Shown here: positions 11,974-60,569 of the stretch, one piece after another
How positions within the stretch are numbered: the first letter of the stretch is position 1
Layout: every line of letters begins with the position of its first letter
Assembly: GCA_051530055.1 (NCBI GenBank)
Contig: CM121341.1
Location: forward strand, 4,690,784 to 4,754,783
Source: Neoechinorhynchus agilis
Lineage: Eukaryota > Animalia > Acanthocephala
Length of the DNA: 64,000 bases
Reading direction: 5' to 3'
Notes under the pieces: generated by a model
The model's database searches: none
Told to the model about the DNA's origin: nothing
The model's input: the letters and a program-made list of their open reading frames with translations, nothing else
Made by a program: the position numbers and the translations under genes

Positions 11974-14900
11974 TTAGTCGTCGTCGTCGTCTAATATCTG
12001 GTTTAGCAGATAATCCTCGTCGGAGTCTTCTTCGCTGTCGCACTGGCTTTCCGCTGGATTTACATTCTGGTCACTTTCGGGATCGAATTCAATGTCAGAA
12101 TTATGTTGAAGCAATTCCTCCTGGTCGTCACGAAGGGGATATTCCAATTTGACGATTTTACTAAGATTGCCGTGAGTACTGGTGATTTGTTCAGGTTGCT
12201 TTCCACCGTGGCCTTCTAATCTCTGTTTAGCATTAGGAAACGGAGAATCGTCTTCTGTCATTTCTCTACTCTGATTGAACTGAAATTTTTCCTTTAGCAA
12301 TCGGGACTTGTCTTCATGCTCCTTATCATTTTGTCCAACTTTATCCCCGTGACACTTCTCGTCTTTGTTAAATCCAACATTTGGAATTCCGCCATCTAAA
12401 CGTGGTTGTTTCATAGGAGAGCAATATTCCGATTCGTTGTATGTTCGAGTCGAGTTCACGTTTCGATTGTCACTTAAATTCAATTTGCAACTTTGATGCT
12501 CGGCACCCCTATTTAAACTAGTCTGATTTGTATTAGATTGTTCTTTTATTTTTTCGGCCAAAGATTGATATGCGTCCGGCAATCTTTTTTTAGTTTCACG
12601 CGTATTCTTTGATTCGTCTTTCTTTTTTTCTACTCGTACGGCTAATGGATCATCGATATCGCTCGGATCGTAACTGCAAATTGTATTAACATATTTTTCA
12701 GTTTCCATATCTTCGTAAATGTACTTCAATTTCGCAGCTTTTTTAAGTTCTTGTTCCTTTTGCTGTTGTTGTTCATCTTGAAGATAATTGTTGTACGCAG
12801 GTCCATTGATCGGATTATAAGCTCCATCGCACCGTTGATACACCATGGATTGGGGATCGATTCTGTTCACTTGTTGCGCTTGGAAATCGCAAAATTGCCT
12901 GTTATTTTGAACATTGAGGTTGTTAACATTATGTGGTTGAAATTGGATTTGTTGTTGATGATGTAACTGCTGGTTGCTTTCGAACTGTAGATTTTGAATG
13001 TTCTCTGCCATTGATCTGTCTTGAGGCACAAACTGGGCGGCCTCTAGATTTCGTCCTACTACCCCATTTGTAATTGGGAACTGGTTACCATAGAACGCTG
13101 ATGGAGCACAGTTTGGATTGGGCTGTTGTATCTGCGTTTGGTATTGTTGCATTGGAGGCCCTTGGTCTTCAGCGACTGTTTGTTGATATTGAGGAACATT
13201 GTTTATTTGGTTAATCTGGTAGGGCGTCGCCGCACAAAATTGTGTTGCTCCACCATTTTGATTCCCAATGCCACTGTAGACTAATTTCTGGTTTCTTTGG
13301 AAATTCGAATTTAATTCAGGTGTACTGTTGACTGCTTGGTTGCTTTGAACTGCAGGTTGCTCCACTTGAAACTGATACATTTGTTGCCCTACGTTTAGAT
13401 TTTGGTGTTGAACATGGCTGTTCAAGTGATCGTTGTAAATTGGTACAACTGTTCGGTGTTCTTGATCCCTCTCGTACACCGAACTATCTTGTAGTGCAAT
13501 TTCGTTTATAGTCCCATCCTGGCTTTCGAGCGCAGCTATGCGTACCGCCTGGACGTCCGAATTTATACCATCGTGTTCGTTAGAAAAATCAGGTGATCGA
13601 TCTTCACGAAATCGGTTACCTTCCACTGCGACGTTTTGTTGATCGGTGACTGGAGCAAAATCTGCTCTTTTTGCAGGCGCGTTCATTGAATATCCTTGTT
13701 GTTCGATTGCAAATCCGTTATTTACGCTAATGTTCTGATTAAGTATTTCTTTTTGGTACTGCGGATTGGGACTCGCAGCCGCAAATCTTTGTTCCTCTGT
13801 GACTGGAACACCAGTTGCTTGTTTTTCGGGCAGTTCGCGTGGAACTTCATTGTTTACCCCAGTGTTCTGATTAGGTGCCGCTATTTGTTGATAGAAACCC
13901 GATGTTGCCATATTTTGTGGATCGGTGAATGGAGCACAAGCCGCTTGCTGGCCCTGCAAGTGCATTGAATATCCTTGCTGTTCGGGTGGATCTTCATTGT
14001 TTACCCCAGCGTTCTGATTTGGCGCCGCTATTTCGTGTTGTTGGTAGAAACCCGCCGTCGTCATGTTTTGTGGATCGGTGAATGGAGCACAAACCGCTTG
14101 CTGGCCCTGCAAGTGCACTGAATATCCTTGTTGTTCGCGTGGAACTCTATTGTTTACGTCAGCGTTCTGATTTGGCGCCGCTATTTCGTGTTGTTGATAG
14201 AAACCCGATGTTGCCATGTTTTGTTGATCGGTGAATGGAGCACAAGCCGCTTGCTGGCCCTGCAAGTGCATTGAATATCCTTGTTGTTCGCGTGGAACCT
14301 ATTGTTTACCCCAGTGTTCTGATTAGGTGCCGCTATTTGTTGATAGAAACCCGTCGTCGCCATGTTTTGTGGATCGGTGACGGGAGCACAAGCCGCTTGC
14401 TGGCCCTGCAAGTTTATTGAATATCCTTGCTGTTCGGGTGGAACTCTATTGCTTACTCCAGTGTTCTGATTTGGCGCCGCTATTTCTTGTTGTTGATAGA
14501 AACCCGATGTTGCCATATTTTGTGGATCGGTGAATGGAGCACAAGCCGCTTGCTGGCCCTGCAAGTGCATTGAATATCCTTGTTGTTCGCGTGGAACTCT
14601 ATTGTTTACGTCAGCGTTCTGATTTGGCGCCGCTATTTCGTGTTGTTGATAGAAACCCGATGTTGCCATGTTTTGTGGATCGGTGATAGGAGCACAAGCC
14701 GCTTGCTGATCCTGCAAGTGCATTGAATATCCTTGTTGTTCGCGTGGATCCTCATTGTTTACCCCAGTGTTCTGATTAGGTGCCGCTATTTGTTGATAGA
14801 AACCCGTCGTCGCCATGTTTTGTGGATCGGTGACGGGAGCACAAGCCGCTTGCTGGCCCTGCAAGTTTATTGAATATCCTTGCTGTTCGGGTGGATCTTC

Positions 14901-17900
14901 ATTGTTTACCCCAGCGTTCTGATTTGGCGCCGCTATTTCGTGTTGTTGGTAGAAACCCGCCGTCGTCATGTTTTGTGGATCGGTGAATGGAGCACAAGCC
15001 GCTTGCTGGCCCTGCAAGTGCACTGAATATCCTTGTTGTTCGTGTGGAACTCTATTGTTTACGTCAGCGTTCTGATTTGGCGCCGCTATTTCGTGTTGTT
15101 GATAGAAACCCGATGTTGCCATGTTTTGTGGATCGGTGATAGGAGCACAAGCCGCTTGCTGATCCTGCAAGTGCATTGAATATCCTTGTTGTTCGCGTGG
15201 ATCCTCATTGTTTACCCCAGTGTTCGGATGAGGTGCCGCAATTTCGTATTGTTGATAGAAACCCGCCGTCGCCATGTTTTGTGGCTCGGTGATTGGAGCA
15301 CAAGCCGCTTGCTGATCCTGCAAGTGCATTGAATATCCTTGCTGTTCGCTTGGATCTTCATTGTTTACCTCAGTGTTCTGATTTGGCGCCGCTATTTGTT
15401 GATAGAAACCCGATGTCGCCATATTTTGTTGATCGGTGAATGGAGCACAAGCCGCTTGCTGGCCCTGGGAGTTTATTGAATATCCTTGTTGTTCGCGTAG
15501 AACTTCATTGTTTACCCCAGTGTTCTGATTAGGTGCCGCTATTTGTTGTTGATAGAAACCCGCCGTCGCCATGTTTTGTGGATCGGTGACTGGAGCACAA
15601 GCCGCTTGCTGGCCCTGCAAGTTTATTGAATGTCCTTGTTGTTCACGTAGACCGTCATTGTTTATCCCGGTGTTCGTATTGGGTGCCGCTATTTCGTATT
15701 GTTGATAGAAACCCGCCGTCGCCATGTTTTGTGGATCGGTGACTGGAGTACAAGCCGCTTGCTGGCCCTGCAAGTTTATTGAATGTCCTTGTTGTTCACG
15801 TAGACCGTCATTGTTTATCCCGGTGTTCGTATTGGGTGCCGCTATTTCGTATTGTTGATAGAAACCCGCCGTCGCCATGTTTTGTGGATCGGTGACTGGA
15901 GCACAAGCCGCTTGCTGGCCCTGCAAGTGCATTGAATATCCTTGCTGTTCAGGTGGATCTTCATTGTTTACCCCAGCGTTCTGATTTGGCGCCGCTATTT
16001 CGTGTTGTTGGTAGAAACCCGCCGTCGTCATGTTTTGTGGATCGGTGAATGGAGCACAAGCCGCTTGCTGGCCCTGCAAGTGCATTGAATATCCTTGCTG
16101 TTCAGGTGGATCTTCATTGTTTACCCCAGCGTTCTGATTTGGCGCCGCTATTTCGTGTTGTTGGTAGAAACCCGCCGTCGTCATGTTTTGTTGATCGGTG
16201 AACTGAGCACAAGCCGCTTGCTGGCCCTGCAAATGCACTGAATATCCTTGTTGTTCGCGTTGAACTCTATTGTTTACGTCAGCGTTCTGATTTGGCGCCG
16301 CTATTTCGTGTTGTTGATAGAAACCCGATGTTGCCATGTTTTGTGGATCGGTGATAGGAGCACAAGCCGCTTGCTGGCCCTGCAAGTTTATTGAATATCC
16401 TTGCTGTTCGGGTGGAACTCTATTGCTTACTCCAGTGTTCTGATTTGGCGCCGCTATTTCTTGTTGTTGATAGAAACCCGATGTTGCCATATTTTGTGGA
16501 TCGGTGAATGGAGCACAAGCCGCTTGCTGGCCCTGCAAGTGCATTGAATATCCTTGCTGTTCGGGTGGATCTTCATTGTTTACCCCAGCGTTCTGATTTG
16601 GCGCCGCTATTTCGTGTTGTTGGTAGAAACCCGCCTTCGTCATGTTTTGTGGATCGGTGAATGGAGCACAAGCCGCTTGCTGGCCCTGCAAGTGCACTGA
16701 ATATCCTTGTTGTTCACGTAGAACGTCATTGTTTATCCCAGTGTTCTGATTAGGTGTCGCTACTTGTTGATAGAAACCCGCCGTCGTCATGTTTTGTGGA
16801 TCGGTGAATGGAGCACAAGCCGCTTGCTGGCCCTGCAAGTTTATTGAATATCCTTGTTGTTCACGTAGAACGTCATTGTTTATCCCAGTGTTCTGATTAG
16901 GTGTCGCTACTTGTTGATAGAAACCCGCCGTCGCCATGTTTTGTGGATCGGTGACTGGAGCACCAGCCGCTTGCTGGCCCTGCAAGTTTATTGAATGTCC
17001 TTGTTGTTCACGTAGACCGTCATTGTTTATCCCAGTGTTCTGATTAGGTGTCGCTACTTGTTGATAGAAACCCGCCGTCGCCATGTTTTGTGGATCGGTG
17101 ACTGGAGCACCAGCCGCTTGCTGGCCCTGCAAGTTTATTGAATGTCCTTGTTGTTCACGTAGAACGTCATTGTTTATCCCAGTGTTCTGATTAGGTGTCG
17201 CTACTTGTTGATAGAAACCCGCCGTCGCCATGTTTTGTGGATCGGTGACTGGAGCACCAGCCGCTTGCTGGCCCTGCAAGTTTATTGAATATCCTTGTTG
17301 TTCACGTAGAACTTCATTGTTTACCCCAGTGTTCGGATTGGGTGCCGCTGTTTCGATTGTTGATAGAAACCCGCCGTCGCCATGTTTTGTGGATCGGTGA
17401 CTGGAGCAGAAGCCGCTTGCTGGCCCTGCAAGTTTATTGAATGTCCTTGTTGTTCACGTAGACCGTCATTGTTTACCCCAGTATTCTGATTAGGTGTCGC
17501 TACTTGTTTATAGAAACCCGCCGTCGAAATGTTTTGTGGATCGGTGACTGGAGCACAAGCCGCTTGCTGGCCCTGCAAGTTTATTGAATATCCTTGTTGT
17601 TCGCGTGGAACTCTATTGTTTACGTCCGGGTTCGAATTGGGTGCCACTACTTGGTGTTGTTGATGGAAACCCGCTGCCGCCATGTTTTGTTGATCGGTGA
17701 ATGGAGCACAATCCGCTTGCTGGCCCTGCAAGTTTATTGAATATCCTTGTTGTTCGCGCGGAACTCTATTGTTTACATCAGCGTTCTGATTAGGTGCCGC
17801 TATTTGGTGTTGAGGATAGTAATCCGCGGTTGCTATGTTTTGTTGATCGGTGAATAGAGCACAAGCCGCTTGCTGGCCCTGCAAATTCATTGAATATCCT

Positions 17901-19571
17901 CGTTGTTCGTGTGAAACTCTATTGTTTACGTCAGCGTTCTGATTCGGTGCCACTACTTGGTGTTGTTGATGGAAACACGCTGCCGCCATGTTTTGTTGAT
18001 CGGTGAATGGAGCACAATCCGCTTGCTGGCCCTGCAAGTTTATTGAATATCCTTGTTGTTCGCGCGGAACTCTATTGTTTACGTCAGCGTTCTGATTAGG
18101 TGCCGCTATTTGGTGTTGAGGATAGTAACCCGCGGTTGCTATGTTTTGTTGATCGGTGAATAGAGCACAAGCCGCTTGCTGGCCCTGCAAGTTCATTGAA
18201 TATCCTTGTTGTTCGCGTGAAACTCTATTGTTTACGTCAGCGTTCTGATTAGGTGCCACTATTTGGTGTTGTTGATGGAAACCCGCTGCCGCCATGTTTT
18301 GTTGATCGGTGAATGGAGCACAAGCCGCTTGCTGGCCCTGCAAGTGCATTGAATATCCTTGTTTTTCGCGTAGAGCTCTGTTGTTTACGTCAGCGCTCTG
18401 ATTAGGTGCCGCTACTTGGTGTTGTTGATGGAAACCCGCTGCCGCCATGTTTTGTTGATCGGTTAATGGAGCACAAGCCGCTTGCTGGCCATGCAAGTGC
18501 ATTGAATATCCTTGTTGTTCGCGTGAAAAAAAAATCCTTGTTTTCCGACTCTTTGTTTACTCACAACCCATTGGTGTTGTTGATGGAAACCCGCTCCTAA
18601 TGAGCACAAGCCGCTTGCTGGCCATGCAAGTGCATTGAATATCCTTGTTGTTCGCGTGAAAATCTATTGTTTACTTCGGCGTTCTGATTAGGAGCCACTA
18701 TTTGGTGTTGAGGATAGTAGCCCGCGGTTGCCATGTTTTGTCGATCGGTACCACTAATCATTCGAACAGGATTTGCCATCAATGTAGGATGTATGTTTTG
18801 GCCACTATTTCCAAAATTTAATCGTTCTGTTGGCGGTTGTTGTTCTTGCTGCCATTGTTGCTGATATTGAGCAGGCTGTTGTTGGTTGTTCATCTGAGTT
18901 CCGTAGTTATGCACTCCCGATGGTTCTTGGGCATTTTGCAATGTTCCAATATTTTGGAGAGCTGGGTTATGGTAAATGTTTTGCGGATTGCCACTTCCTT
19001 GAATAAAATTCTGAGCTGTCATCATGGGATTTGGCTGTTGCATTTGCTGCGTGCCGTAAAAGTGACCCGTATTGCCGGCCAATTGTTGGAGATTTTGGTT
19101 TTGGAAGGCATTTGCATTGCTTACCGGACCGAAATTTTGTTGGAAATGCCCTTGCACATTCGGGTTGTAGAAATTTCCTTGAGCATACGGTGCCATAACA
19201 GCGGCTCCATTTCCACCAGCCGCAACAGCATATGGTACGGCGCCATCGTAGGTAAGATTTTGAGCTTGAACTTCGTCCCTTTTCCTTAAACGACCATCCT
19301 TGTAGCTTCTATTGACAGCCCAGTGCATTCCTTTAGGACCCTGAGATACTCTCACATGTATAAACTTCCTGCTCACAGATAATGTATGGCGAACTGAGTT
19401 TTTCCAACTTTTTACTTCCTCTTCGTCAGTTATTGCGGCAAAATATGGATAATTCTGTTTAAAATAATCGTAGATCTTTTTCAGTGGCAGTGTGCGATTG
19501 GGAGCGTTGTTGATCGCCATCTTCGCTATTTCAGAGATGCTTATGTCTCCCCACGCATTTGGTCTCGGCAT
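11974..19571 (-). CDS. FOXO-like: Divergent FoxO-type forkhead protein, copy A, with about 33 Q/N-rich repeats; three frame breaks (pseudogene or assembly errors)
   Basis: RPNAWGDISISEIAKMAI...YPYF...WKNSVRHTLS..RKFIHV...HW aligns with FoxO RRNAWGNLSY...VPYF...WKNSIRHNLS..SKFIRV, including the FoxO-type H2-H3 insert. ORFs 18597-19571, 17321-18502, 14181-17279 and 11974-14271 are colinear with intact copy B. Confidence 0.85.
13700..18740 (-). repeat. Coding tandem repeat (150/153-bp unit, 50-51 aa) in copy A
   Basis: Approximate consensus REQQGYSMHLQGQQAACAPFTDPQNMATAGFYQQHEIAAPNQNADVNNRVP. Confidence 0.97.
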
Positions 19572-26925: not shown

Positions 26926-27250
26926 TCACGTGTTCACGCGACTTTCCTTTCGTTCTCCATTTTGGTTATTAAACTCGTCAATTTCGGAAACGAATTGAAT
27001 GTCAGAATTATGTTCAAGCGATTTCTCCCCGCTCATCATGAAGAAATTCAAATTTGACGATTTCACTACGATTGCCGTGAGTACTGGCGATTTGTTAAGG
27101 CTGCATTTCAGCGGCACTTCGAGTTTCACTCTCCTCTGATTATACTCCAATCGTTCTCCGGTCAGAGGAGATTTCCGCTGTCGTAATGTTTTGTGGATCG
27201 GTGACTGGAGCACAAGCCGCTTGCTGGCCCTGCAAGTTTATTGAATATCC
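26926..27250 (-). pseudogene. FoxO-like relic C: last coding repeat joined to a deleted C-terminal region
   Basis: 27181-27250 is a coding-type repeat. 27100-27180 matches copy B (KSHLTGERLENNQ). 26990-27100 matches copy A (STHGNLSKIVK...QHNSDIEF). Confidence 0.85.
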
Positions 27251-30200
27251 TTATTGTTCGTGTGCAACTTCATTGTTTACGTCATGTTCTGAATCAATGC
27301 GGCGATTTATTGTCGCAGAAAGATACGAGCGGTGTCACTTTATTGTTTTTCTGTAACTACAACACAATTTTCTTGCTTTGCCGTCAAGTGCATTGAATAT
27401 TCTTATTGTTCGTGTGCAACTTCATTGTTTACGTCATGTTCTGAATCAATGCGGCTATTTATTGTCGCAGAAAGATACGAGCGGTGTCACTTTATTGTTT
27501 TTCTGTAACTACAACACAATTTTCTTGCTTTGCCGTCAAGTGCATTTAATATTCTTATTGTTCGTGTGCAACTTCATTGTTTACGTCATGTTCTGAATCA
27601 ATGCGGCTATTTATTCCCGCAGATAGATACGAGCGGTGTCACTTTATTGTTTTGCGCTAACTAAAACACAATTTTCTTGCTTTGCCGTCAAGTGCATTGA
27701 ATATCCTTATTGTTCGTGTGCAACTTCATTGTTTACGTCATGTTCTGAATCAATGCGGCTATTTATTGTCGCAGATAGATACGAGCGGTGTCACTTTATT
27801 GTTTTTCTGTAACTACAACACAATTTTCTTTCTTTGCCGTCAAGTGCATTGAATATTCTTATTGTTCGTGTGCAACTTCATTGTTTACGTCATGTTCTGA
27901 ATCAATGCGGCGATTTATTGTCGCAGAAAGATACGAGCGGTGTCACTTTATTGTTTTTCTGTAACTACAACACAATTTTCTTGCTTTGCCGTCAAGTGCA
28001 TTTAATATTCTTATTGTTCGTGTGCAACTTCATTGTTTACGTCATGTTCTGAATCAATGCGGCTATTTATTCCCGCAGATAGATACGAGCGGTGTCACTT
28101 TATTGTTTTGCGCTAACTAAAACACAATTTTCTTGCTTTGCCGTCAAGTGCATTGAATATCCTTATTGTTCGTGTGCAACTTCATTGTTTACGTCATGTT
28201 CTGAATCAATGCGGCTATTTATTGTCGCAGATAGATACGGGCGGTGTCACTTTATTGTTTTTCTGTAACTACAACACAATTTTCTTTCATTGCCGTCAAG
28301 TGAATTGAATATTCTTATTGTTCGTGTGCAACTTCATTGTTTACGTCATGTTCTGAATCAATGCGGCTATTTATTCCCGCAGATAGATACGAGCGGTGTC
28401 ACTTTATTGTTTCTCTGTAACTACAACACAATTTTCTTGCTTTGCGGTCAAGTGCATTTAATATTCTTATTGTTTGTGGTCAACTTCATTGTTTACGTCA
28501 TGTTCTGAATCAATGCGGCGATTTATTGTCGCAGATAGATACGGGCGGTGTCACTTTATTGTTTCTCTGTAACTACAACACAATTTTCTTGCTTTGCGGT
28601 CAAGTGCATTTAATATTCTTATTGTTTGTGGTCAACTTCATTGTTTACGTCATGTTCTGAATCAATGCGGCTATTTATTCCCGCAGATAGATACGAGCGG
28701 TGTCACTTTATTGTTTTTCGCTAACTACAACACAATTTTCTTGCTTTGCCGTCAAGTGCATTGAATATCCTTATTGTTCGTGTGCAACTTCATTGTTTAC
28801 GTCATGTTCTGAATCAATGCGGCTATTTATTGTCGCAGAAAGATACGGGCGGTGTCACTTTATTGTTTTTCTGTAACTACAACACAATTTTCTTTCATTG
28901 CCGTCAAGTGAATTGAATATTCTTATTGTTCGTGTGCAACTTCATTGTTTACGTCATGTTCTGAATCAATGCGGCTATTTATTGTCGCAGATAGATACGA
29001 GCGGTGTCACTTTATTGTTTTTCTCTAACTACAACACAATTTTCTTGCTTTGCCGTCAAGTGCATTTAATATTCTTATTGTTCGTGTGCAACTTCATTGT
29101 TTACGTCATGTTCTGAATCAATGCGGCTATTTATTGTCGCAGATAGATACGGGCGGTGTCACTTTATTGTTTTTCTGTAACTACAACACAATTTTCTTGC
29201 TTTGCCGTCAAGTGCATTGAATATTCTTATTGTTCGTGTGCAACTTCATTGTTTGCGTCATGTTCTGAATCAATGCGGCTATTTATTCCCGCAGATAGAT
29301 ACGAGCGGTGTCACTTTATTGTTTCTCTGTAACTACAACACAATTTTCTTGCTTTGCGGTCAAGTGCATTTAATATTCTTATTGTTTGTTGCAACTTCAT
29401 TGTTTACGTCATGTTCTGAATCAATGCGGCTATTTATTCTCGCAGATAGATACGAGCGGTGTCACTTTATTGTTTCTCTGTAACTACAACACAATTTTCT
29501 TGCTTTGCGGTCAAGTGCATTTAATATTCTTATTGTTTGTGGTCAACTTCATTGTTTACGTCATGTTCTGAATCAATGCGGCGATTTATTGTCGCAGATA
29601 GATACGGGCGGTGTCACTTTATTGTTTCTCTGTAACTACAACACAATTTTCTTGCTTTGCCGTCAAGTGCATTTAATATTCTTATTGTTCGTGTTCAACT
29701 TCATTGTTTACGTCATGTTCTGAATCAATGCGGCGATTTATTGTCGCAGATAGATACGAGCGGTGTCACTTTATTGTTTCTCTGTAACTACAACACAATT
29801 TTCTTGCTTTGCGGTCAAGTGCATTTAATATTCTTATTGTTTGTGGTCAACTTCATTGTTTACGTCATGTTCTGAATCAATGCGGCTATTTATTCCCGCA
29901 GATAGATACGAGCGGTGTCACTTTATTGTTTTGCGCTAACTAAAACACAATTTTCTTGCTTTGCCGTCAAGTGCATTGAATATCCTTATTGTTCGTGTGC
30001 AACTTCATTGTTTACGTCATGTTCTGAATCAATGCGGCTATTTATTGTCGCAGAAAGATACGGGCGGTGTCACTTTATTGTTTTTCTGTAACTACAACAC
30101 AATTTTCTTGCTTTGCCGTCAAGTGCATTGAATATCCTTATTGTTCGTGTGCAACTTCATTGTTTACGTCATGTTCTGAATCAATGCGGCTATTTATTGT

Positions 30201-33200
30201 CGCAGAAAGATACGGGCGGTGTCACTTTATTGTTTTTCTGTAACTACAACACAATTTTCTTTCATTGCCGTCAAGTGCATTGAATATCCTTATTGTTCGT
30301 GTGCAACTTCATTGTTTACGTCATGTTCTGAATCAATGCGGCTATTTATTGTCGCAGAAAGATACGGGCGGTGTCACTTTATTGTTTTTCTGTAACTACA
30401 ACACAATTTTCTTTCATTGCCGTCAAGTGCATTGAATATTCTTATTGTTCGTGTGCAACTTCATTGTTTACGTCATGTTCTGAATCAATGCGGCGATTTA
30501 TTGTCGCAGATAGATACGGGCGGTGTCACTTTATTGTTTTTCTGTAACTACAACACAATTTTCTTGCTTTGCCGTCAAGTGCATTGAATATCCTTATTGT
30601 TCGTGTGCAACTTCATTGTTTACGTCATGTTCTGAATCAATGCGGCTATTTATTGTCGCAGAAAGATACGGGCGGTGTCACTTTATTGTTTTTCTGTAAC
30701 TACAACACAATTTTCTTTCATTGCCGTCAAGTGCATTGAATATTCTTATTGTTCGTGTGCAACTTCATTGTTTACGTCATGTTCTGAATCAATGCGGCGA
30801 TTTATTGTCGCAGAAAGATACGAGCGGTGTCACTTTATTGTTTTTCTGTAACTACAACACAATTTTCTTGCTTTGCCGTCAAGTGCATTTAATATTCTTA
30901 TTGTTCGTGTGCAACTTCATTGTTTACGTCATGTTCTGAATCAATGCGGCTATTTATTGTCGCAGAAAGATACGAGCGGTGTCACTTTATTGTTTTTATG
31001 TAACAACAACACAATTTTCTTGCTTTGCCGTCAATTGCATTTAAAATTCTTATTGTTCGTGTGCCACTTCATTGTTTACGTATGTTCTGAATCAATGCGG
31101 CTATTTATTCCCGCAGATAGATACGAGCGGTGTCACTTTATTGTTTTGCGCTAACTAAAACACAATTTTCTTGCTTTGCCGTCAAGTACATTGAATATCC
31201 TTATTGTTCGTGTGCAACTTCATTGTTTACGTCATGTTCTTAATCAATGCGGCTATTTATTCCCGCAGATAGATACGAGCGGTGTCACTTTATTGTTTTG
31301 CGCTAACTAAAACACAATTTTCTTGCTTTGCCGTCAAGTGCATTGAATATCCTTATTGTTCGTGTGCAACTTCATTGTTTACGTCATGTTCTGAATCAAT
31401 GCGGCTATTTATTGTCGCAGAAAGATACGGGCGGTGTCACTTTATTGTTTTTCTGTAACTACAACACAATTTTCTTTCATTGCCGTCAAGTGAATTGAAT
31501 ATTCTTATTGTTCGTGTGCAACTTCATTGTTTGCGTCATGTTCTGAATCAATGCGGCTATTTATTCCCGCAGATAGATACGAGCGGTGTCACTTTATTGT
31601 TTCTCTGTAACTACAACACAATTTTCTTGCTTTGCGGTCAAGTGCATTTAATATTCTTATTGTTTGTGGTCAACTTCATTGTTTACGTCATGTTCTGAAT
31701 CAATGCGGCGATTTATTGTCGCAGATAGATACGGGCGGTGTCACTTTATTGTTTCTCTGTAACTACAACACAATTTTCTTGCTTTGCCGTCAAGTGCATT
31801 GAATATTCTTATTGTTCGTGTGCAACTTCATTGTTTACGTCATGTTCTTAATCAATGCGGCTATTTATTCCCGCAGATAGATACGAGCGGTGTCACTTTA
31901 TTGTTTTTCGCTAACTAAAACACAATTTTCTTGCTTTGCCGTCAAGTGCATTGAATATCCTTATTGTTCGTGCGCAACTTCATTGTTTACGTCATGTTCT
32001 GAATCAATGCGGCTATTTATTGTCGCAGAAAGATACGGGCGGTGTCACTTTATTGTTTTTCTGTAACTACAACACAATTTTCTTTCATTGCCGTCAAGTG
32101 CATTGAATATTCTTATTGTTCGTGTGCAACTTCATTGTTTACGTCATGTTCTGAATCAATGCGGCTATTTATTGCCGCAGATAGATACGAGCGGTGTCAC
32201 TTTATTGTTTTTCGCTAACTACAACACAATTTTCTTGCTTTGCCGTCAAGTGCATTTAATATTCTTATTGTTCGTGTGCAACTTCATTGTTTACGTCATG
32301 TTCTGAATCAATGCGGCGATTTATTGTCGCAGAAAGATACGAGCGGTGTCACTTTATTGTTTCTCTGTAACTACAACACAATTTTCTTTCATTGCCGTCA
32401 AGTGCATTTAATATTCTTATTGTTTGTGGTCAACTTCATTGTTTACGTCATGTTCTGAATCAATGCGGCGATTTATTGTCGCAGAAAGATACGAGCGGTG
32501 TCACTTTATTGTTTTGCTGTAACTACAACACAATTTTTTTCATTGCCGTCAAGTGAATTGAATATTCTTATTGTTCGTGTGCAACTTCATTGTTTACGTC
32601 ATGTTCTGAATCAATGCGGCTATTTATTGTCGCAGATAGATACGAGCGGTGTCACTTTATTGTTTTTCTGTAACTACAACACAATTTTCTTTCATTGCCG
32701 TCAAGTGCATTTAATATTCTTATTGTTCGTGTGCAACTTCATTGTTTACGTCATGTTCTGAATCAATGCGGCGATTTATTGTCGCAGAAAGATACGAGCG
32801 GTGTCACTTTATTGTTTCTCTGTAACTACAACACAATTTTCTTTCATTGCCGTCAAGTGCATTTAATATTCTTATTGTTTGTGGTCAACTTCATTGTTTA
32901 CGTCATGTTCTGAATCAATGCGGCGATTTATTGTCGCAGATAGATACGGGCGGTGTCACTTTATTGTTTTTCTGTAACTACAACACAATTTTCTTTCATT
33001 GCCGTCAAGTGCATTGAATATTCTTATTGTTCGTGTGCAACTTCATTGTTTACGTCATGTTCTGAATCAATGCGGCTATTTATTCCCGCAGATAGATACG
33101 AGCGGTGTCACTTTATTGTTTTTCGCTAACTAAAACACAATTTTCTTGCTTTGCCGTCAAGTGCATTGAATATTCTTATTGTTCGTGTGCAACTTCATTG

Positions 33201-34737
33201 TTTACGTCATGTTCTGAATCAATGCGGCGATTTATTGTCGCAGAAAGATACGGGCGGTGTCACTTTATTGTTTTTCTGTAACTACAACACAATTTTCTTT
33301 CATTGCCGTCAAGTGCATTTAATATTCTTATTGTTCGTGTGCAACTTCATTGTTTACGTCATGTTCTGAATCAATGCGGCTATTTATTCCCGCAGATAGA
33401 TACGAGCGGTGTCACTTTATTGTTTTTCGCTAACTACAACACAATTTTCTTGCTTTGCCGTCAAGTGCATTGAATATTCTTATTGTTCGTGTGCAACTTC
33501 ATTGTTTACGTCATGTTCTGAATCAATGCGGCGATTTATTGTCGCAGAAAGATACGAGCGGTGTCACTTTATTGTTTTTCTGTAACTACAACACAATTTT
33601 CTTTCATTGCCGTAAAGTGCATTGAATATTCTTATTGTTCGTGTGCAACTTCATTGTTTACGTCATGTTCTGAATCAATGCGGCTATTTATTGTCGCAGA
33701 TAGATACGAGCGGTGTCACTTTATTGTTTTTCGCTAACTACAACACAATTTTCTTGCTTTGCCGTCGATTGCATTTAATATTCTTATTGTTCGTGTGCAA
33801 CTTCATTGTTTACGTCATGTTCTGAATCAATGCGGCTATTTATTGTCGCAGAAAGATACGGGCAGTGTCACTTTATTGTTTTTCGCTAACTACAACACAA
33901 TTTTCTTTCATTGCCGTCAAGTGAATTGAATATTTTTATTGTTCGTGTGCAACTTCATTGTTTACGTCATGTTCTGAATCAATGCGGCGATTTATTGTCG
34001 CAGATAGATACGAGCGGTGTCACTTTATTGTTTTTCGCTAACTACAACACAATTTTCTTACTTTGCCGTCAAGTGCATTTAATATTCTTATTGTTCGTGT
34101 GCAACTTCATTGTTTACGTCATGTTCTGAATCAATGCGGCTATTTATTGTCGCAGAAAGATACGGGCGGTGTCACTTTATTGTTTTTCGCTAACTACAAC
34201 ACAATTTTCTATCATTGCCGTCAAGTGCATTTAATATTCTTATTGTTCGTGCGCAACTTCATTGTTTACGTCATGTTCTGAATCAATGCGGCTATTTATT
34301 GTCGCAGATAGATACGAGCGGTGTCACTTTATTGTTTTTCGCTAACTACAACACAATTTTCTATCATTGCCGTCAAGTGCATTGAATATTCTTATTGTTT
34401 GTGGTCTACTTCATTGTTTACGTCATGTTCTGAATCAATGCGGCGATTTATTTTCGCAGATAGATACGAGCGGTGTCACTTTATTGTTTTTCTGTAACTA
34501 CAACACAATTTTCTATCATTGCCGTAAAGTGCATTGAATATTCTTATTGTTCGTGTACAACTTCATTGTTTACGTCATGTTCTGAATCAATGCGGCTATT
34601 TATTGTCGCAGAAAGATACGAGCAGTGTCACTTTATTGTTTTTCTGTAACTAAAACACAATTTTCTTGCTTTGCCGTCAAGTGCATTGAATATTCTTATT
34701 GTTTGTGGTCAACTTCATTGTTTACGTCATGTTCTGA
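27251..34737. repeat. 152-bp satellite, block 1 (about 49 units)
   Basis: Unit TTGCCGTCAAGTGCATTGAATATTCTTATTGTTCGTGTGCAACTTCATTGTTTACGTCATGTTCTGAATCAATGCGGCTATTTATTGTCGCAGATAGATACGAGCGGTGTCACTTTATTGTTTTTCGCTAACTACAACACAATTTTCTTGCT. The period is also visible in ORF-track spacings of 152, 304 and 456 bp. Confidence 0.99.
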
Positions 34738-35109: not shown

Positions 35110-38100
35110 TTAGTCGTCGCTTAATATCTGGTTTAACAAATTATCTTCATCGGAGTCTTCATCGCTGTCAAATTGACTCTCCTCTGGATTTCCGTTTGTA
35201 TTATTAGTCGCGTCATTTTCCTGGTCCTCCTCGGTGTTATCGTTTTTCCTCGGACTGTCAGCGATCCCCAACGCTGCTCGTATCGCGTCCTCTAGTTGAA
35301 GAGTTTCAGCATCCTTTGGTTTTCGTATTACCTCCGCCGGTGGTTCGGATGGTGGTAATTCCTCACGAACGGATTGGGGTGTCATCTCGCCACCTTCAGA
35401 ATAATCTTCTTCTTCGGATTGTTCTCCTTCTGGAGTGCAAGGGCGAAAAAGTATGTTTTCTAGGAACATGTTAACAGTTTGATTAGCATCAACGCTCATA
35501 TAGCTTTCGGCCGGACTGGTAGCCGAAGCGCTTGACGATAGATTAAGTTCCTCTATCGATCGAGGATATTCTAAAATGTACTGCGCGAGCGTTGCCTCGT
35601 CGAACTGAGATGATCCGTTAAATTGATCCTTTGTTTCAACTCCAACTGGAATGGGTATATGTTGCTCAGATTCAAATTGTTCATTGATCTTGTGATATTG
35701 TTGGTGGTGTTCAGTTTGGGGCTCCTGCTGGTTTATCGGTCCAAAGTTAACATCGGGAGAAAAATTGAAGTTATCACGATCGTTGTCTGGCGCTTCAAAT
35801 GAAAAATAGTGCTCGTGTTCGACGTTTGGCCGACGATATCTATCTAAATCTTCATTGGCAATCTCATATCTATCAGCCGACAATGTATTAAATATAGTCC
35901 CCCTTTGCTCATCGTGTAGATTTACGGTGTCATCCAGCTGCAGTTCAGCGGCACTTCGAGTTTCATTCTCTGCTCTAATCTGATTATTTTCTAATCGTTC
36001 TCCGGTCAGATGAGATTTCTGCTCGTTTAGCAACCGGAAATTTTCTTGGTAATCCTCATCATTAAGCCCAACTTTATCCGAAAAATTACGCTGGTTGCTT
36101 TCGTGTGCCCCCTTGATTTCAGCTTCAATATTTGGTTCAGGACACATCTTTTGCTTTTTAGGTGGATGACATTCCGAAACGTCGTGTGTCCTTTTAGTGC
36201 TTTGTTTATCGGAAAAAATTTGGTGGCTCCGTATTGATTTTTGTTCACACATCTGCTCATTCGACTTCGCCGTTTCATCAGTTACCTTATTCGAGGACAG
36301 ATCTGCTCCTTGATAGTTTTGTACGCCCGTCATATTTTCTCTTTGCGTACAATTAATTTTTTGCATTTTGCTTAATTCCTTATAATTATCGGTGCCTTCA
36401 TATTGCCTTTTCATTGCTGTTATTGAATTTTGATTGAATCGTTTTTGGCCACTCGCCGATCGATCATCGCCATCCTTATTGATCATTGAAGCACAGTTCA
36501 TTGAATATCCTTGCTGTTCGCGTGGAACTTCATTCTTAACCTCAGTGTTCTGATTTGGCGCCGCTATTTCGTGTTGTTGATAAAAATGCGCCGTCGTAAT
36601 GTTTTGTGGATCGGTGACTGGAGCATAAGCCGCTTGCTGGCCTTGCAAGTGCATTGAATATCCTTGCTGCTCGCGTTGATCTTCATTGTTAACCTCAGTG
36701 TTCAGATTTTGCGCCGCTATTTCGGTTTGTTGATAGAAACCTACCGTCGCCATGTTTTGTGGTTCGCTGATTGGAGCACAAGCCGCTTGCTGGCCCTGCA
36801 AGTTTATTGAATATCCTTGCTGTTCGCGTGGATCTTCATTGTTTACCCCAGTGTTCGGATTTGGCGCCGTTATTTCGGTTTGTTGATAGAAACCCGCTGC
36901 CGTCATGTTTTGTGGATTGGTTACTGGAGCACGAGCCGCTTGCTGATCCTGCAAGTACATTGAATATCCTTGTTGTTCGCGTTGAACTTCATTGTTTACC
37001 CAAGTGTTCGGATTTGGAGCCGCTATTTCGGTTTCTTGATAGAAACCCACCGTCGCCATGTTTTGTGGTTCGGTGATTGGAGCGCAAGCCGCTTGCTGAT
37101 CCTGCAAGTGCATTGAATATCCTTGCTGTTCGCGTGGATCTTCATTGTTAACCTCAGTGTTCGGATGAGGTGCCGCAATTTCGTATTGTTGGTGGAAACC
37201 CACCGTCGCCATGTTTTGTAGTTCGGTGATTGGAGCACAAGCCGCTTGCTGATCCTGCAAGTGCATTGAATATCCTTGTTGTTCGCGTGGATCTTCATTG
37301 TTAACCTCAGTGTTCGGATTTGGCGCCGTTATTTCGGTTTGTTGATAGAAACCCGCTGCCGTCATGTTTTGTGGATTGGTTACTGGAGCACAAGCCGCTT
37401 GCTGATCCTGCAAGTGCATTGAATATCCTTGCTGTTCGCGTGGAACTTCATTGTTTACCCCAGTGTTCGGATTTGGCGCCGCTATTTCGGTTTGTTGATA
37501 GAAACCCACCGTCGCCATGTTTTGTGGTTCGCTGATTGGAGCACAAGCCGCTTGCTGATCCTGCAAGTGCATTGAATATCCTTGTTGTTCGCGTTGATCT
37601 TCATTGTTAACCTCAGTGTTCTGATTTGGCGCCGCTATTTCGTGTTGTTGATAGAAACCCACCGTCGCCATGTTTTGTGGTTCAGTGATTGGAGCACAAG
37701 CCGCTTGCTCATCCTGCAAGTGCATTGAATATCCTTGTTGTTCGCGTTGATCTTCATTGTTAACCTCAGTGTTCTGATTTGGCGCCGCTATTTCGTGTTG
37801 TTGATAGAAACCCACCGTCGCCATGTTTTGTGGTTCAGTGATTGGAGCACAAGCCGCTTGCTCATCCTGCAAGTGCATTGAATATCCTTGTTGTTCGCGT
37901 TGATCTTCATTGTTAACCTCAGTGTTCTGATTTGGCGCCGCTATTTCGTGTTGTTGATAGAAACCCACCGTCGCCATGTTTTGTGGTTCAGTGATTGGAG
38001 CACAAGCCGCTTGCTCATCCTGCAAGTGCATTGAATATCCTTGTTGTTCGCGTTGATCTTCATTGTTAACCTCAGTGTTCTGATTTGGCGCCGCTATTTC

Positions 38101-41100
38101 GTGTTGTTGATAGAAACCCACCGTCGCCATGTTTTGTGGTTCAGTGATTGGAGCACAAGCCGCTTGCTCATCCTGCAAGTGCATTGAATATCCTTGTTGT
38201 TCGCGTTGATCTTCATTGTTTACCTCAGTGTTCTGATTTGGCGCCGCTATTTCGTGTTGTTGATAGAAACCCACCGTCGCCATGTTTTGTGGTTCAGTGA
38301 TTGGAGCACAAGCCGCTTGCTGATCCTGCAAGTGCATTGAATATCCTTGTTGTTCGCGTTGAACTTCATTGTTTACCCCAGTGTTCGGATTTTGCGCCGC
38401 TATTTCGTTTTGTTGATAGAAGCCCACCGTCGCCATGTTTTTTGGTTCGGTAATTGGAGCACAAGCCGCTTGCTGATCCTGCAAGTGCATTGAATATCCT
38501 TGCTGTTCGCGATGATCTTCATTGTTAACCTCAATGTTCTGATTTGGCGCCGCTGTTTCGTTTTGTTGATAAAAACGTGCTGTTGCCATGTTTTGGTGTT
38601 CGGTGATTCGAGCACATACCGCTTGTTCGGCCGGTAAGTTTATTGAATATCCTCGCTGTTCGCGTGGAACTTCATTGTTTACCTCAGTATTCTGATTGGG
38701 TGCCACTATTTGGCGTTTTTGATAGAAACTCGCCGCCGTCGTGGTTTGTTGATCGGTGAATTGAGCACAAACCGCTTGTTGGGCTTGCAAATGCATCGAA
38801 TATCCTTGCTGTTCGCGTGGAACTTCATTGTTTACCCCAATGTTCTGATTGGGTTCCGCTATTTTGTGTTGTTGATAGAAACCCGCTGCCGTCATGTTTT
38901 GTGGATTGGTTACTGGAGCATAAGCCGCTTGCTGGCCCCGCGAGTTCATTGAATATCCTTCTTGTTCGCTTGGAACTCTATTGTTTACGTCAGTGTTCCG
39001 ATGTGGCCCCGCTATTTGGTGTTGTTGATGGATACCCGCTGTCGCCATGCTTTGTTGATCGGTGGCTGGAGCGCAAGGCATTTGTTTGGTTTGCAAGTGC
39101 ATTGAATATCCTTGTTGTTCGCGTTGAACTCTATTGTTTGCGTCAGCGTTCTGATTAGGTGCCACTACTTGGTTTTGTTGATAGAAACCCGCTGCTGCCA
39201 TGTTTTGTTGATCGGATGCTGGAGTGCAAGGCATTTGTTGGCCCTGCAAGTTCATTGAATATCCTTGTTGTTCGCGTTGAACTCTACTGTTTACGTCCGG
39301 GTTCGAATTGGGTGCCATTACTTGGTATTGTTGATAGAAACCCGCTGCCGCCATGGTTTGTTGATCGGTTAATGGAGCACAAGTCGCTTGCTGGCCCTGC
39401 AAGTTCATTGAATATCCTTGTTGTTCGCGTGGAACTCTATTGTTTACGTCAGCGTTCTGATTAGGTGCCGCTATTTGGTGTTGTTGATGGAAACCCGCTG
39501 CCGCCATGTTTTGTTGATCGTTGAATGGAGCACAAACTCCTTGCTGGCCCTGCAAGTTCATTGAATATCCTTGTTGTTCACGTGAAACTCTATTGTTTAC
39601 GTCAGCGTTCTGATTAGGTGCCGCTATTTGGTGTTGTTGATGGAAACCCGCTGCCGCCATGTTTTGTTGATCGTTGAATGGAGCACAAACTCCTTGCTGG
39701 CCCTGCAAGTTCATTGAATATCCTTGTTGTTCACGTGAAACTCTATTGTTTACGTCAGCGTTCTGATTAGGTGCCGCTATTTGGTGTTGTTGATGGAAAC
39801 CCGCTGCCGCCATGTTTTGTTGATCGTTGAATGGAGCACAAACTCCTTGCTGGCCCTGCAAGTTCATTGAATATCCTTGTTGTTCACGTGAAACTCTATT
39901 GTTTACGTCAGCGTTCTGATTAGGTGCCGCTATTTGGTGTTGTTGATGGAAACCCGCTGCCGCCATGTTTTGTTGATCGTTGAATGGAGCACAAACTCCT
40001 TGCTGGCCCTGCAAGTTCATTGAATATCCTTGTTGTTCACGTGAAACTCTATTGTTTACGTCAGCGTTCTGATTAGGTGCCGCTATTTGGTGTTGAGGAT
40101 AGTAACCCGCGGTTACCATGTTTTGTTGATCGGTGAATGGAGCACAAACTCCTTGCTGGCCCTGCAAGTTCATTGAATATCCTTGTTTTTCGCGTTGAAC
40201 TCTATTGTTTACGTCCGGGTTCTGATTGGGTGCCGCTATTTGGTGTTGTTGATTGAAACCCGCTGCCGCCATGTTTTGTTGATCGGTGAATGGAGCACAA
40301 GCCGCTTGCTGGCCCTGCAAGTGCATTGAATATCCTTGTTTTTCGCGTAGAGCTCTATTGTTTACGTCAGCGCTCTGATTATGTGCCACTACTTGGTGTT
40401 GTTGATGGAAACCCGCTGCCGCCATGCTTTGTTGATCGGTGAATGGAGCACAAGCCGCTTGCTGGCCCTGCAAGTGCATTGAATATCCTTGTTGTTCGCG
40501 TGCAACTCTATTGTTTACGTCAGCGTTCTGATTAGGTGCCACTACTTGGTTTTGTTGGTAGAAACCCGCTGCTGCCATGTTTTGTTGATCGGTGAATGGA
40601 GCACAAACCGCTTGTTGGCCTTGCAAGTGCATTGTAAATCCTTGTTGTTCGCGTGAAACTGTATTGTTTACGTCAGCGTTCTGGTTAGGTGCCGCTATTT
40701 GGTGTTGAGGATTGTAACTCGCGGTTGCCATGTTTTGTTGATCGGTGAATGGAGCACAAGCCGCTTGCTGGCCCTGCAAGGGCATTGAATATCCTTGTTG
40801 TTCGCGTGAAAATCTATTGTTTACGTCGGCGTTCTGATTAGGTGCCACTATTTGGTGTTGAGGATAGTAGCCCGCGGTTGCCATGTTTTGTCGATCGGTA
40901 CCACTAATCATTCGAACAGGATTTGCCATCAATGTAGGATGTATGTTTTGGCCACTATTTCCCAAATTTAATCGTTCTGTTGGCGGTTGTTGTTCTTGCT
41001 GCCATTGTTGCTGATATTGAGCAGGCTGTTGTTGGTTGTTCATCTGAGTTCCGTAGTTATGCACTCCCGATGGGTCTTGGGCATTTTGCAATGTTCCAAT

Positions 41101-41930: not shown

Positions 41931-42024
41931 GTACACTAAGTTTTGTCGTTGTTTTCAAAACGCCAATAAAATTCAAAACATAAACCGATTTTAGATATTA
42001 CTATCGAGTCGCTGTATTGTATTA

Positions 42025-58900: not shown

Positions 58901-60569
58901 GCATTGAATATTCTTATTGTTCGTGTGCAACTTCATTGTTTACGTCATGTTCTGAATCAATGCGGCTATTTATTGTCGCAGATAGATACGAGCGGTGTCA
59001 CTTTATTGTTTTTCGCTAACTACAACACAATTTTCTTGCTTTGCCGTCAAGTGCATTTAATATTCTTATTGTTCGTGTGCAACTTCATTGTTTACGTCAT
59101 GTTCTGAATCAATGCGGCGATTTATTGTCGCAGATAGATACGAGCGGTGTCACTTTATTGTTTTTCGCGGACTACAACACAATTTTCTTGCTTTGCCGTC
59201 AAGTGCATTGAATATTCTTATTGTTCGTGTGCAACTTCATTGTTTACGTCATGTTCTGAATCAATGCGGCTATTTATTGTCGCAGATAGATACGAGCGGT
59301 GTCACTTTATTGTTTTTCGCTAACTACAACACAATTTTCTTGCTTTGCCGTCAAGTGCATTTAATATTCTTATTGTTCGTGCAACTTCATTGTTTACGTC
59401 ATGTTCTGAATCAATGCGGCGATTTATTGTCGCAGATAGATACGAGCGGTGTCACTATTGTTTTTCTGTAACTACAACACAATTTTCTATCATTGCCGTA
59501 AAGTGCATTGAATATTCTTATTGTTCGTTTGCAACTTCATTGTTTACGTCATGTTCTGAATCAATGCGGCTTGTTATTGTCGCAGAAAGATACGAGCGGT
59601 GTCACTTTATTGTTTTTCTGTAACTATAACACAATTTTCTATCATTGCCGTAAAGTGCATTGAATATTCTTATTGTTCGTGCTCAACTTCATTGTTTACG
59701 TCACGTTCTGAATCAATGCGGCGATTTATTGTCGCAGATAGATACGAGCGGTGTCACTTTATTGTTTTTCGCGGAATACAATACAATTTTCTTGCTTTGC
59801 CGTCGATTGCATTTAATATTCTTATTGTTCGTGTGCAACATCATTGTTTACGTCATGTTCTGAATCAATGCGGCGATTTATTGTCGCAGATAGATACGAG
59901 CGGTGTCACTTTATTGTTTTTCGCGGACTACAATACAATTCTCTTGCTTTGCCGTCAAGTGCATTGAATATTCTTATTGTTCGTGTGCAACTTCATTGTT
60001 TACGTCATGTTCTGAATCAATGCGGCGATTTATTGTCGCAGAAAGATGAGCGGTGTCACTTTATTGTTCGCGGACTACAACACAATTTTCTTGCTTTGCC
60101 GTCGAGATCATTTAATATTCTTATTGTTCGTGTGCAACTTCATTGTTTACGTCATGTTCTGAATCAATGCGGCGATTTATTGTCGCAGAAAGATACGAGC
60201 GGTGTCACTTTATTGGTTTTCTGTAACTACAACACAATTTTCTATCATTGCCGTAAAGTGCATTGAATATTCTTATTGTTCGTGTGCAACTTCATTGTTT
60301 ACGTCACGTTCTGAATCAATGCGGCGATTTATTGTCGCAGAATAGATACGGGCGGTGTCACTTTATTGTTTTTCGCGGACTACAATACAATTTTCTTGCT
60401 TTGCCGTCATGTGCATTGAATATTCTTATTGTTCGTGTGCAACTTCATTGTTTACGTCATGTTCTGAATCAATGCGGCGATTTATTGTCGCAGATAGATA
60501 CGAGCGGTGTCACTTTATTGTTTTTCGCTAACTACAACACAATTTTCTTGCTTTGCCGTCAAGTGCATT
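43958..60569. repeat. 152-bp satellite, block 2 (about 109 units)
   Basis: Same unit and orientation as block 1, with block-enriched variants such as CGCGGACTAC, CGTAAAGTG and CTATCATTG. Confidence 0.99.

What the first reader, a model, noticed from the sequence alone, without database searches (positions are those of the whole stretch)
13700..18740. The FoxO-like coding repeats themselves encode the FoxO element
The V-N-N of each repeat is usually encoded GTA AAC AAT, which gives TTGTTTAC on the + strand (e.g. 14150-14157). Variant ATAAACA units (about 15660-15820 and 16730-17200) still fit the RYAAAYA forkhead consensus. Many C-terminal units of copy B switch to GTTAACA, which does not. Dual coding (peptide plus self-binding site) would tie repeat number to both protein length and intragenic autoregulation. 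Concerted evolution alone could also keep one codon choice.
Basis: partly seen in the sequence, partly recalled or inferred. Interest (0 to 1): 0.8.

Follow-up and report, generated by a model that had tools for sequence, protein, structure and literature searches.

The report
Forkhead motif copied by repeat amplification
Each 153-base coding repeat of two FoxO-like genes does spell the forkhead binding site TTGTTTAC, but codon statistics show no selection for it, so it is most likely one chance codon choice that repeat amplification copied about 200 times, including into a non-coding satellite derived from the same repeat.

Summary
TTGTTTAC occurs 200 times in the window against 4.8 expected. 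It comes from Val-Asn-Asn encoded GTA-AAC-AAT in a 51-codon repeat of two tandem, intronless FoxO-like forkhead genes on the minus strand. Copy A (11974-19571) has a broken reading frame. Copy B (35110-41721) is intact at 2203 aa.

Synonymous variation at the three codons matches background (5.5% against 7.7% minor codons). The Val codon is the 7th most variable of 49. The synonymous change GTA>GTT has destroyed the site in 9 of 28 units of the intact copy. Given this gene's codon usage, any V-N-N has about a 30% chance of spelling GTAAAYA and 12% of spelling GTAAACAA. The 200 sites are therefore effectively one event multiplied by amplification.

Most sites (155) lie outside the genes. They sit in a 152-bp non-coding satellite (27233-34737 and 43957-60569) that is collinear with the coding unit (108/153 identical, stops in all frames). 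One array adjoins remnants of a decayed third gene copy.

Whether the protein binds these arrays is untested. The forkhead recognition helix is intact, so a binding platform or sink remains possible but unsupported.

The parts
35110..41721 (-). Copy B: intact intronless ORF of 2203 aa. It has an N-terminal FoxO-like forkhead domain (aa 10-90), a Q/N-rich linker, 28 in-register 51-aa repeats and a unique acidic C-terminus.
   Evidence: ORF list, translation, Pfam Forkhead E 3.5e-13, PDB FOXO3 E 5.8e-14
36514..40797 (-). Copy B coding repeat array: 28 units of exactly 153 bp. The V-N-N site is GTAAACAA in 17 units, another RYAAAYA core in 2, and GTTAACA or GTTAAGA in 9.
11974..19571 (-). Copy A: paralogue of copy B (N-terminal 290 codons 93% nt and 89% aa identical). 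Its reading frame is split into four ORFs by 1-bp deletions and a degenerate stretch at about 18500-18600. It is probably a pseudogene or encodes a truncated 324-aa forkhead protein.
13831..18361 (-). Copy A coding repeat array: 30 units of 146-153 bp. The site is GTAAACAA in 22, ATAAACA in 6 and GTAAGCA in 2.
27233..34737 (.). Satellite array 1: about 49 units of 152 bp, non-coding, collinear with the coding unit and in the same orientation. TTGTTTAC is present in 48 units.
43957..60569 (.). Satellite array 2: about 109 units of the same 152-bp satellite, with 304/456-bp higher-order periodicity. TTGTTTAC is present in 107 units.
27175..27260 (-). Coding-type partial repeat unit, 96.5% identical to copy A 17518-17603. 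It switches into satellite-type sequence inside the block the two families share.
26974..27186 (-). Remnant of a C-terminal gene segment (82% to copy A 12067-12208, 83% to copy B 35937-36023). It marks a decayed third gene copy next to satellite array 1.
42022..43956 (.). 1.95-kb element upstream of copy B, 98.5% identical to 20028-21985 upstream of copy A. The copy A element overlaps a short ORF (21597-22118) with a weak, below-cut-off match to reverse transcriptase. In copy B the element abuts satellite array 2.

Best explanation
The periodic TTGTTTAC is a passenger of tandem amplification. A 153-bp (51-codon) unit in a lineage-specific FoxO-like gene happened to encode a Val-Asn-Asn tripeptide as GTA-AAC-AAT. 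Unequal exchange and gene conversion then multiplied that unit about 30 times in each of two paralogous genes. A degenerated, non-coding derivative of it (152 bp, with a frameshift and stops) was multiplied about 158 times in two flanking satellite arrays, at least one of which lies where a third gene copy decayed. The motif is as well kept as the moderately conserved peptide it encodes and no better, so nothing in the sequence indicates selection on the DNA site itself. Shown: the anatomy, the homology between satellite and coding unit, and the absence of synonymous constraint. Inferred: the direction from coding repeat to satellite, and the lack of function of the sites.
For: (1) Synonymous test over 58 units: minor synonymous codons are 9/163 (5.5%) at V-N-N against 163/2129 (7.7%) at all other degenerate codons. 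Mean synonymous heterozygosity is 0.097 against 0.109. 62% of consecutive codon triples are as invariant or more so. The Val codon (GTA 42, GTT 9) ranks 7th most variable of 49. The two Asn codons are invariant, like 21 of 49 codons. (2) The site-destroying synonymous GTA>GTT has spread to 9 of 28 units in the intact copy B. (3) At the DNA level the 8-mer is intact in 67% of coding units, rank 25 of 146 windows, while GGATATTC reaches 90% and CAAAACAT 84%. In the satellite it is intact in 97.4% of units, rank 13 of 145, with a maximum of 99.4%. (4) Prior probability: with this gene's codon usage outside the repeats (GTA 30% of Val, AAC 40% of Asn), a V-N-N spells GTAAAYA with p of about 0.30 and GTAAACAA with p of about 0.12. 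(5) Outside the repeats there are 2 sites in 30.4 kb. (6) The satellite consensus is collinear with the coding consensus: 108/153 identical, one 1-bp indel, stops in all three frames, and equal divergence at codon positions 1, 2 and 3 (0.75/0.65/0.73). A coding-type partial unit and a C-terminal gene remnant sit at its edge.
Against: The site lies in the longest perfectly shared run (15 nt, AACTTCATTGTTTAC) between the coding and satellite consensus sequences, although these differ at 29% of positions. Only 12 of 153 8-mer windows are fully shared, so p is about 0.08 for a random window. Relative to the coding unit, the satellite unit also has two further forkhead-like sites in the same orientation, ATAAATA and AAAAACAA. 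The forkhead recognition helix keeps the Asn, Arg-His and Ser positions that align with FOXO3 and FOXO4. The forkhead domain is under purifying selection between the two copies, dN/dS 0.37. The protein could therefore plausibly bind these sites. With such homogenised repeats the synonymous test has limited power.
Confidence: 0.8

Rival explanations
1. Dual coding. The V-N-N codons are kept as GTA-AAC-AAT because the encoded FoxO-like protein binds its own gene body. Repeat number would then set both protein length and the strength of intragenic autoregulation.
For: The canonical 8-mer is present in 39 of 58 units and an RYAAAYA core in 47 of 58. The forkhead domain is FoxO-like with an intact recognition helix. 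Both Asn codons are invariant.
Against: Synonymous variation is at background level. The Val third position is among the most variable, and its variant abolishes the core in a third of the units of the only intact copy. Invariant codons are the norm in this array, 21 of 49. The best-kept motif set is in copy A, whose frame is broken. The 8-mer is not an outlier in DNA-level conservation.
Confidence: 0.06
2. Binding platform or sink. The roughly 155 perfect sites in the satellites, plus those in the gene bodies, act at the DNA level as a clustered array for this or another forkhead protein. They could titrate it, nucleate chromatin or tether the locus. In that case the constraint would lie on the satellite rather than on codon choice in the genes.
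For: There are 155 same-orientation sites at 152-bp spacing flanking the gene that encodes a FoxO-type domain. The site lies in the longest run shared between satellite and coding unit. The satellite consensus has two additional forkhead-like sites per unit. Arrays of decoy sites are known to titrate transcription factors in other systems (PMC8599769, PMC7686491).
Against: Within the satellite the 8-mer is no better conserved than many other windows, rank 13 of 145. Nearly all satellite columns are at least 0.99 identical, so homogenisation explains the retention. The shared block could be kept by exchange between the arrays, since a coding-to-satellite junction lies exactly in it. The extra AT-rich sites are post hoc and expected at 0.1-0.3 per unit from background density.
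Confidence: 0.1
3. Assembly artefact. The arrays, their copy numbers or the frameshifts in copy A are products of long-read assembly of a difficult repeat.
For: Copy A is interrupted by single-base deletions (units of 152 and 146 bp). Tandem arrays are error-prone in assemblies (PMC6868369).
Against: Units carry consistent, structured variant patterns in two genes and two satellite arrays, with clean junctions to unique sequence. The motif itself does not depend on copy number.
Confidence: 0.03

Closest known systems
Exonic transcription-factor sites ('duons', exonic enhancers; e.g. PMC4745165, bioRxiv 10.1101/2021.09.06.459186; the original duon concept cited from my own knowledge)
   Same: A consensus transcription-factor site lies inside codons, so in principle one sequence could serve both protein and regulation.
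   Different: The signature claimed for duons, codon bias or reduced synonymous change at the site, was tested here and is absent. Occupancy is unknown. The many copies are not independent.
FoxO / DAF-16 transcription factors and their GTAAACAA (DBE) site
   Same: The forkhead domain is closest to FOXO3, FOXO4 and FOXO1 structures and aligns without gaps through the FoxO-type loop before helix 3. The recognition-helix Asn, Arg-His and Ser are kept. The nearest library relatives carry the FOXO transactivation domain.
   Different: Identity to any relative is only 31-42%. There is no RxRxxS/T (Akt-type) site anywhere in copy B. No FOXO-TAD or KIX-binding domain was detected. About 1,400 residues consist of an orphan 51-aa repeat.
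Satellites born from other genomic sequences, such as transposable elements or genes (reviews PMC6947457, PMC5615363; Stellate/Su(Ste) of Drosophila cited from my own knowledge)
   Same: A tandem, homogenised, non-coding array whose monomer is recognisably derived from a neighbouring functional sequence.
   Different: Here the monomer derives from an internal coding minisatellite of a transcription-factor gene and keeps its unit length (152 against 153 bp). Arrays flank the surviving gene copies.
Decoy or sponge arrays of transcription-factor binding sites (PMC8599769, PMC7686491)
   Same: Many clustered copies of one consensus site that could compete for a factor.
   Different: There is no evidence of binding or of any effect here. 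This resemblance is only a possibility.

Membership tests
Forkhead (Fox) transcription factors | Forkhead / winged-helix DNA-binding domain | tested here: met
   Pfam PF00250: copy B aa 10-90, E 3.5e-13, 49.9 bits (cut-off 27); copy A, E 1.8e-18, 66.9 bits
FoxO subfamily | Forkhead domain closest to FoxO, including the FoxO-type extra residues between helices 2 and 3 | tested here: met
   The top 11 PDB hits are FOXO3, FOXO4, FOXO1 or one chain titled only 'Fork head domain containing protein' (E 5.8e-14 to 2.7e-10). Other subfamilies score E 1.9e-8 or weaker. The alignment to FOXO3 and FOXO4 has no gap through that loop. The nearest library relatives have FOXO-TAD.
FoxO subfamily | Akt/PKB consensus phosphorylation sites (RxRxxS/T) flanking or inside the forkhead domain | tested here: not met
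   A regex scan found none in the 2203-aa copy B or in the copy A N-terminal ORF
FoxO subfamily | C-terminal FOXO transactivation or KIX-binding domains | tested here: not met
   Forkhead was the only Pfam hit at E<=0.01. The C-terminal 418 aa have no homologue at E<=0.001.
Functional forkhead binding site (DBE) | Sequence match to GTAAACAA or the RYAAAYA core | tested here: met
   39 of 58 coding units and 155 satellite units match the 8-mer
Functional forkhead binding site (DBE) | Occupancy by a forkhead protein and an effect on transcription | not testable with these tools
   Needs ChIP, CUT&RUN, EMSA or reporter assays
Dual-use codons (duons) | Reduced synonymous variation or codon bias at the site relative to other codons | tested here: not met
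   5.5% against 7.7% minor codons. Synonymous heterozygosity 0.097 against 0.109. The Val codon ranks 7th most variable of 49.
Satellite DNA | Long head-to-tail non-coding arrays of a homogenised monomer | tested here: met
   49 + 109 units of 152 bp, 94% matches, most columns at least 0.99 identical, stops in all frames

The most novel reading that the evidence does not exclude
A fast-evolving FoxO-like protein recognises a satellite that was born from its own coding repeat. About 155 perfect GTAAACAA sites at nucleosome-scale spacing flank the gene, with about 40 more inside the gene bodies. Together they would form a self-derived binding platform or sink that feeds back on the factor's availability or on the chromatin of its own locus.
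Probability: 0.1. Interest if true: 0.8.

Novelty: new member of a known kind. Interest (0 to 1): 0.3.

Why it matters
As proposed, with codons kept for self-binding, this would have been a striking case of dual coding coupled to repeat number. The sequence evidence does not support it. The case shows that a several-hundred-fold motif excess inside tandem repeats counts as a single event. What remains of interest is evolutionary. An orphan FoxO-type gene has a 51-aa coding minisatellite, and a large non-coding satellite visibly derives from that coding unit. This gives a traceable example of how a satellite can arise from a gene. If the protein does bind GTAAACAA, it would also be a natural array of its own sites next to the gene, and that is cheap to test in vitro.

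Tried and rejected
- **Organism identification.** The source record is NCBI GCA_051530055.1, CM121341.1, a 19.4-Mb chromosome with the window at about 4.69-4.75 Mb. No paper mentions the assembly. The word-indexed protein searches returned only the window's own proteins for the forkhead N-terminus and a mitochondrial S18-like ORF, and nothing for the copy B C-terminus. The taxon stays unknown; it is presumably an animal or a close relative.
- **Homologues of the 51-aa repeat.** The exhaustive search of 1.84 billion representatives gave only copy A's own fragment, plus weak hits at 22-25% identity to proteins with bacterial-type FG-GAP surface-protein domains. I regard these as compositional.
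- **Fold of the repeat.** AlphaFold2 on three units with a 31-row alignment gave pLDDT 33 and pTM 0.19. This is no usable model, which is consistent with disorder but proves nothing.
- **Promoter sites.** A few core-like motifs (GCAAACA, GTAAATA) are conserved about 130-160 bp upstream of both copies. There are too few to interpret.
- **Satellite-level constraint.** The per-column and per-window conservation tests do not single out the motif.
- **Literature.** Searches for a FoxO gene with such repeats, or for a satellite derived from a coding repeat, found no direct precedent among the listed papers.
Full report
**Observation.**
The flagged stretch is a 153-bp tandem repeat: TRF reports 13833-18525, 31 copies and 89% matches. 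Read on the minus strand, it encodes a 51-aa unit with consensus QGYSMHLQGQQAACAPFTDPQNMATAGFYQQHEIAAPNQNTEVNNEVPREQ. The exact 8-mer TTGTTTAC occurs 200 times in the window, against 4.8 +/- 2.1 in dinucleotide shuffles.

In 58 aligned units the V-N-N site falls out as follows:

| Site at V-N-N | Copy A (30 units) | Copy B (28 units) |
|---|---|---|
| GTAAACAA | 22 | 17 |
| Another RYAAAYA core | 6 (ATAAACA) | 2 |
| Neither | 2 (GTAAGCA) | 9 (GTTAACA x8, GTTAAGA x1) |

The description is therefore accurate.

**What the locus is.**
Two paralogous, intronless genes lie on the minus strand.
- Copy B (35110-41721) is an intact 2203-aa ORF.
- Copy A (11974-19571) has the same plan, but its frame is cut into four ORFs by single-base deletions (units of 152 and 146 bp) and a degenerate stretch near 18500-18600.
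- Both start with a forkhead domain: Pfam PF00250 at E 3.5e-13 and 1.8e-18.
- The closest solved structures are FOXO3, FOXO4 and FOXO1 (E 5.8e-14 to 1e-12). The alignment to FOXO3 and FOXO4 has no gap through the FoxO-type loop and the recognition helix, where the aligned Asn, Arg-His and Ser are kept.
- The protein is not a canonical FoxO. It has no RxRxxS/T site, no FOXO-TAD or KIX domain, and at most 42% identity to any of 1.84 billion representatives. The nearest of those do carry FOXO-TAD.
- The 51-aa repeat has no credible homologue and gives no confident fold, with pLDDT 33. It is 18% Gln, 12.5% Ala and 11% Asn and probably disordered.
- Between the two copies the forkhead domain has dN/dS 0.37. 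Among units pN/pS is about 0.68, which indicates weak constraint.

**Most of the motif copies are not in the genes.**
155 of the 200 sites lie in a 152-bp satellite at 27233-34737 (about 49 units) and 43957-60569 (about 109 units). Its consensus is collinear with the coding unit over the whole length. It shares 108 of 153 positions, has one 1-bp indel and lies in the same orientation. It has stops in all three frames and no third-position excess of differences (identity 0.75/0.65/0.73 by codon position). It is thus a non-coding derivative of the coding repeat.

At the low-coordinate edge of array 1 a coding-type partial unit (27175-27260, 96.5% identical to copy A units) passes directly into satellite-type sequence. 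Beside it lies a remnant of the C-terminal gene region (26974-27186, 82-83% identical to copies A and B). I infer that the array occupies the repeat region of a decayed third gene copy, or recombined into it. The direction from coding repeat to satellite is an inference from these remnants.

| Measure over the 58 units | V-N-N codons | Background |
|---|---|---|
| Minor synonymous codons | 9/163 (5.5%) | 163/2129 (7.7%) at the other degenerate codons |
| Mean synonymous heterozygosity | 0.097 | 0.109 over all 49 degenerate codons |

- 62% of consecutive codon triples are at least as invariant as V-N-N.
- The Val codon (GTA 42, GTT 9, plus ATA 6 and GCA 1) is the 7th most variable of 49.
- The two Asn codons are invariant, but so are 21 of 49 codons.
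- GTA>GTT is synonymous, abolishes the RYAAAYA core, and has spread to 9 of 28 units in the only intact copy.
- At the DNA level the 8-mer is intact in 67% of coding units, rank 25 of 146 windows. The best windows are GGATATTC at 90% and CAAAACAT at 84%.
- In the satellite it is intact in 97.4% of units, rank 13 of 145, with a best value of 99.4%.

**Chance.**
From codon usage in the non-repeat parts of the two genes (GTA 30% of Val, AAC 40% of Asn), a V-N-N tripeptide spells GTAAAYA with probability of about 0.30 and GTAAACAA with about 0.12. Because every unit descends from one founder, the relevant count is one event, not 200. Non-repeat sequence has 2 sites in 30.4 kb.

**Most likely mechanism.**
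The site is a passenger. One codon choice in the founder unit was multiplied by unequal exchange and gene conversion in the two genes. It was multiplied again when a degenerated derivative expanded as a satellite. Confidence is about 0.8.

**What keeps a functional reading alive.**
- The site sits in the longest run shared by the coding and satellite consensus sequences (15 nt, AACTTCATTGTTTAC). Only 12 of 153 8-mer windows are fully shared, so p is about 0.08.
- The satellite unit has two further forkhead-like sites in the same orientation, ATAAATA and AAAAACAA.
- The protein looks competent to bind DNA.

These are suggestive, post hoc and individually weak. The shared block can equally be explained by exchange between the arrays, since the observed coding-to-satellite junction lies inside it. 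I put the binding-platform or sink reading at about 0.1 and strict dual coding at about 0.06.

**Comparison with known things.**
The idea belongs to the duon or exonic-enhancer concept (PMC4745165; bioRxiv 10.1101/2021.09.06.459186). The defining constraint signature was tested and not found, and occupancy is untestable here. The satellite fits general accounts of satellites arising from other sequence classes (PMC6947457, PMC5615363). A monomer derived from an internal coding minisatellite of a transcription-factor gene, at the same unit length and next to surviving copies, is an unusual and neatly traceable example. Decoy-site arrays that titrate factors are documented elsewhere (PMC8599769, PMC7686491), and no more than an analogy can be claimed.

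**Limits.**
- The organism is unknown: NCBI GCA_051530055.1, CM121341.1, with no paper found.
- No related species or population data could be brought in, so all tests compare paralogous units that evolve in concert. This limits power.
- The frameshifts in copy A and the array lengths rest on a single assembly.

**Verdict.**
The best explanation is amplification of an incidental codon choice. Interest is 0.3, mainly for the gene-derived satellite and for the cheap binding experiment that could upgrade it.

Noticed in passing
window 27233-34737 and 43957-60569: A 152-bp non-coding satellite (about 158 units, 24 kb of the window) is collinear with the 153-bp coding repeat of the forkhead genes, 108/153 identical. 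Array 2 shows 304/456-bp higher-order periodicity.
   Followed up: yes
window 62282-64000 (- strand): Match to eukaryotic large-subunit rRNA (Rfam RF02543, 844 bits, model positions 752-3401, cut by the window end). An rDNA unit or fragment therefore lies about 1.7 kb beyond the end of satellite array 2.
   Followed up: no
window 49-2846 (+ strand): Ty3/gypsy-type retrotransposon pol with protease, reverse transcriptase, RNase H and integrase domains in two ORFs. It is followed by 141-bp and 326-bp tandem repeats at 2999-3264 and 3800-4625.
   Followed up: partly
window 20028-21985 and 42022-43956: A 1.95-kb element upstream of both gene copies is 98.5% identical, more alike than the coding N-termini (93%) or the proximal promoters (86%). 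A short ORF overlapping the copy A element (21597-22118) has a weak, below-cut-off match to reverse transcriptase. This suggests a recent insertion or conversion.
   Followed up: partly
window 18702-19571 vs 40852-41721: Between copies A and B, the forkhead domain is much more diverged at synonymous sites (dS 0.26) than the adjoining linker (dS 0.06). This suggests gene conversion over the linker and repeats but not over the DNA-binding domain.
   Followed up: partly
window 11974-13698 vs 35110-36366: The C-terminal non-repeat regions of the two copies are unrelated except for the last 38 or so residues, an acidic tail ending ...DSDED.LLNQIL.DD (66% identical).
   Followed up: partly
window 5101-5520 (-), 6415-6789 (+), 23954-24502 (+), 7474-8736 (+): Single-exon ORFs match ribosomal protein S18, an Rpb4-type RNA polymerase subunit and a GNAT acetyltransferase, plus a 420-aa lysine-rich ORF with no Pfam match. 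The S18-like protein has no relative in the word-indexed search of 5.8 billion proteins, which points to a poorly sampled lineage.
   Followed up: partly
window 10081-10694 (+): Fragments of a non-LTR reverse transcriptase (RVT_1) lie just downstream of copy A.
   Followed up: no
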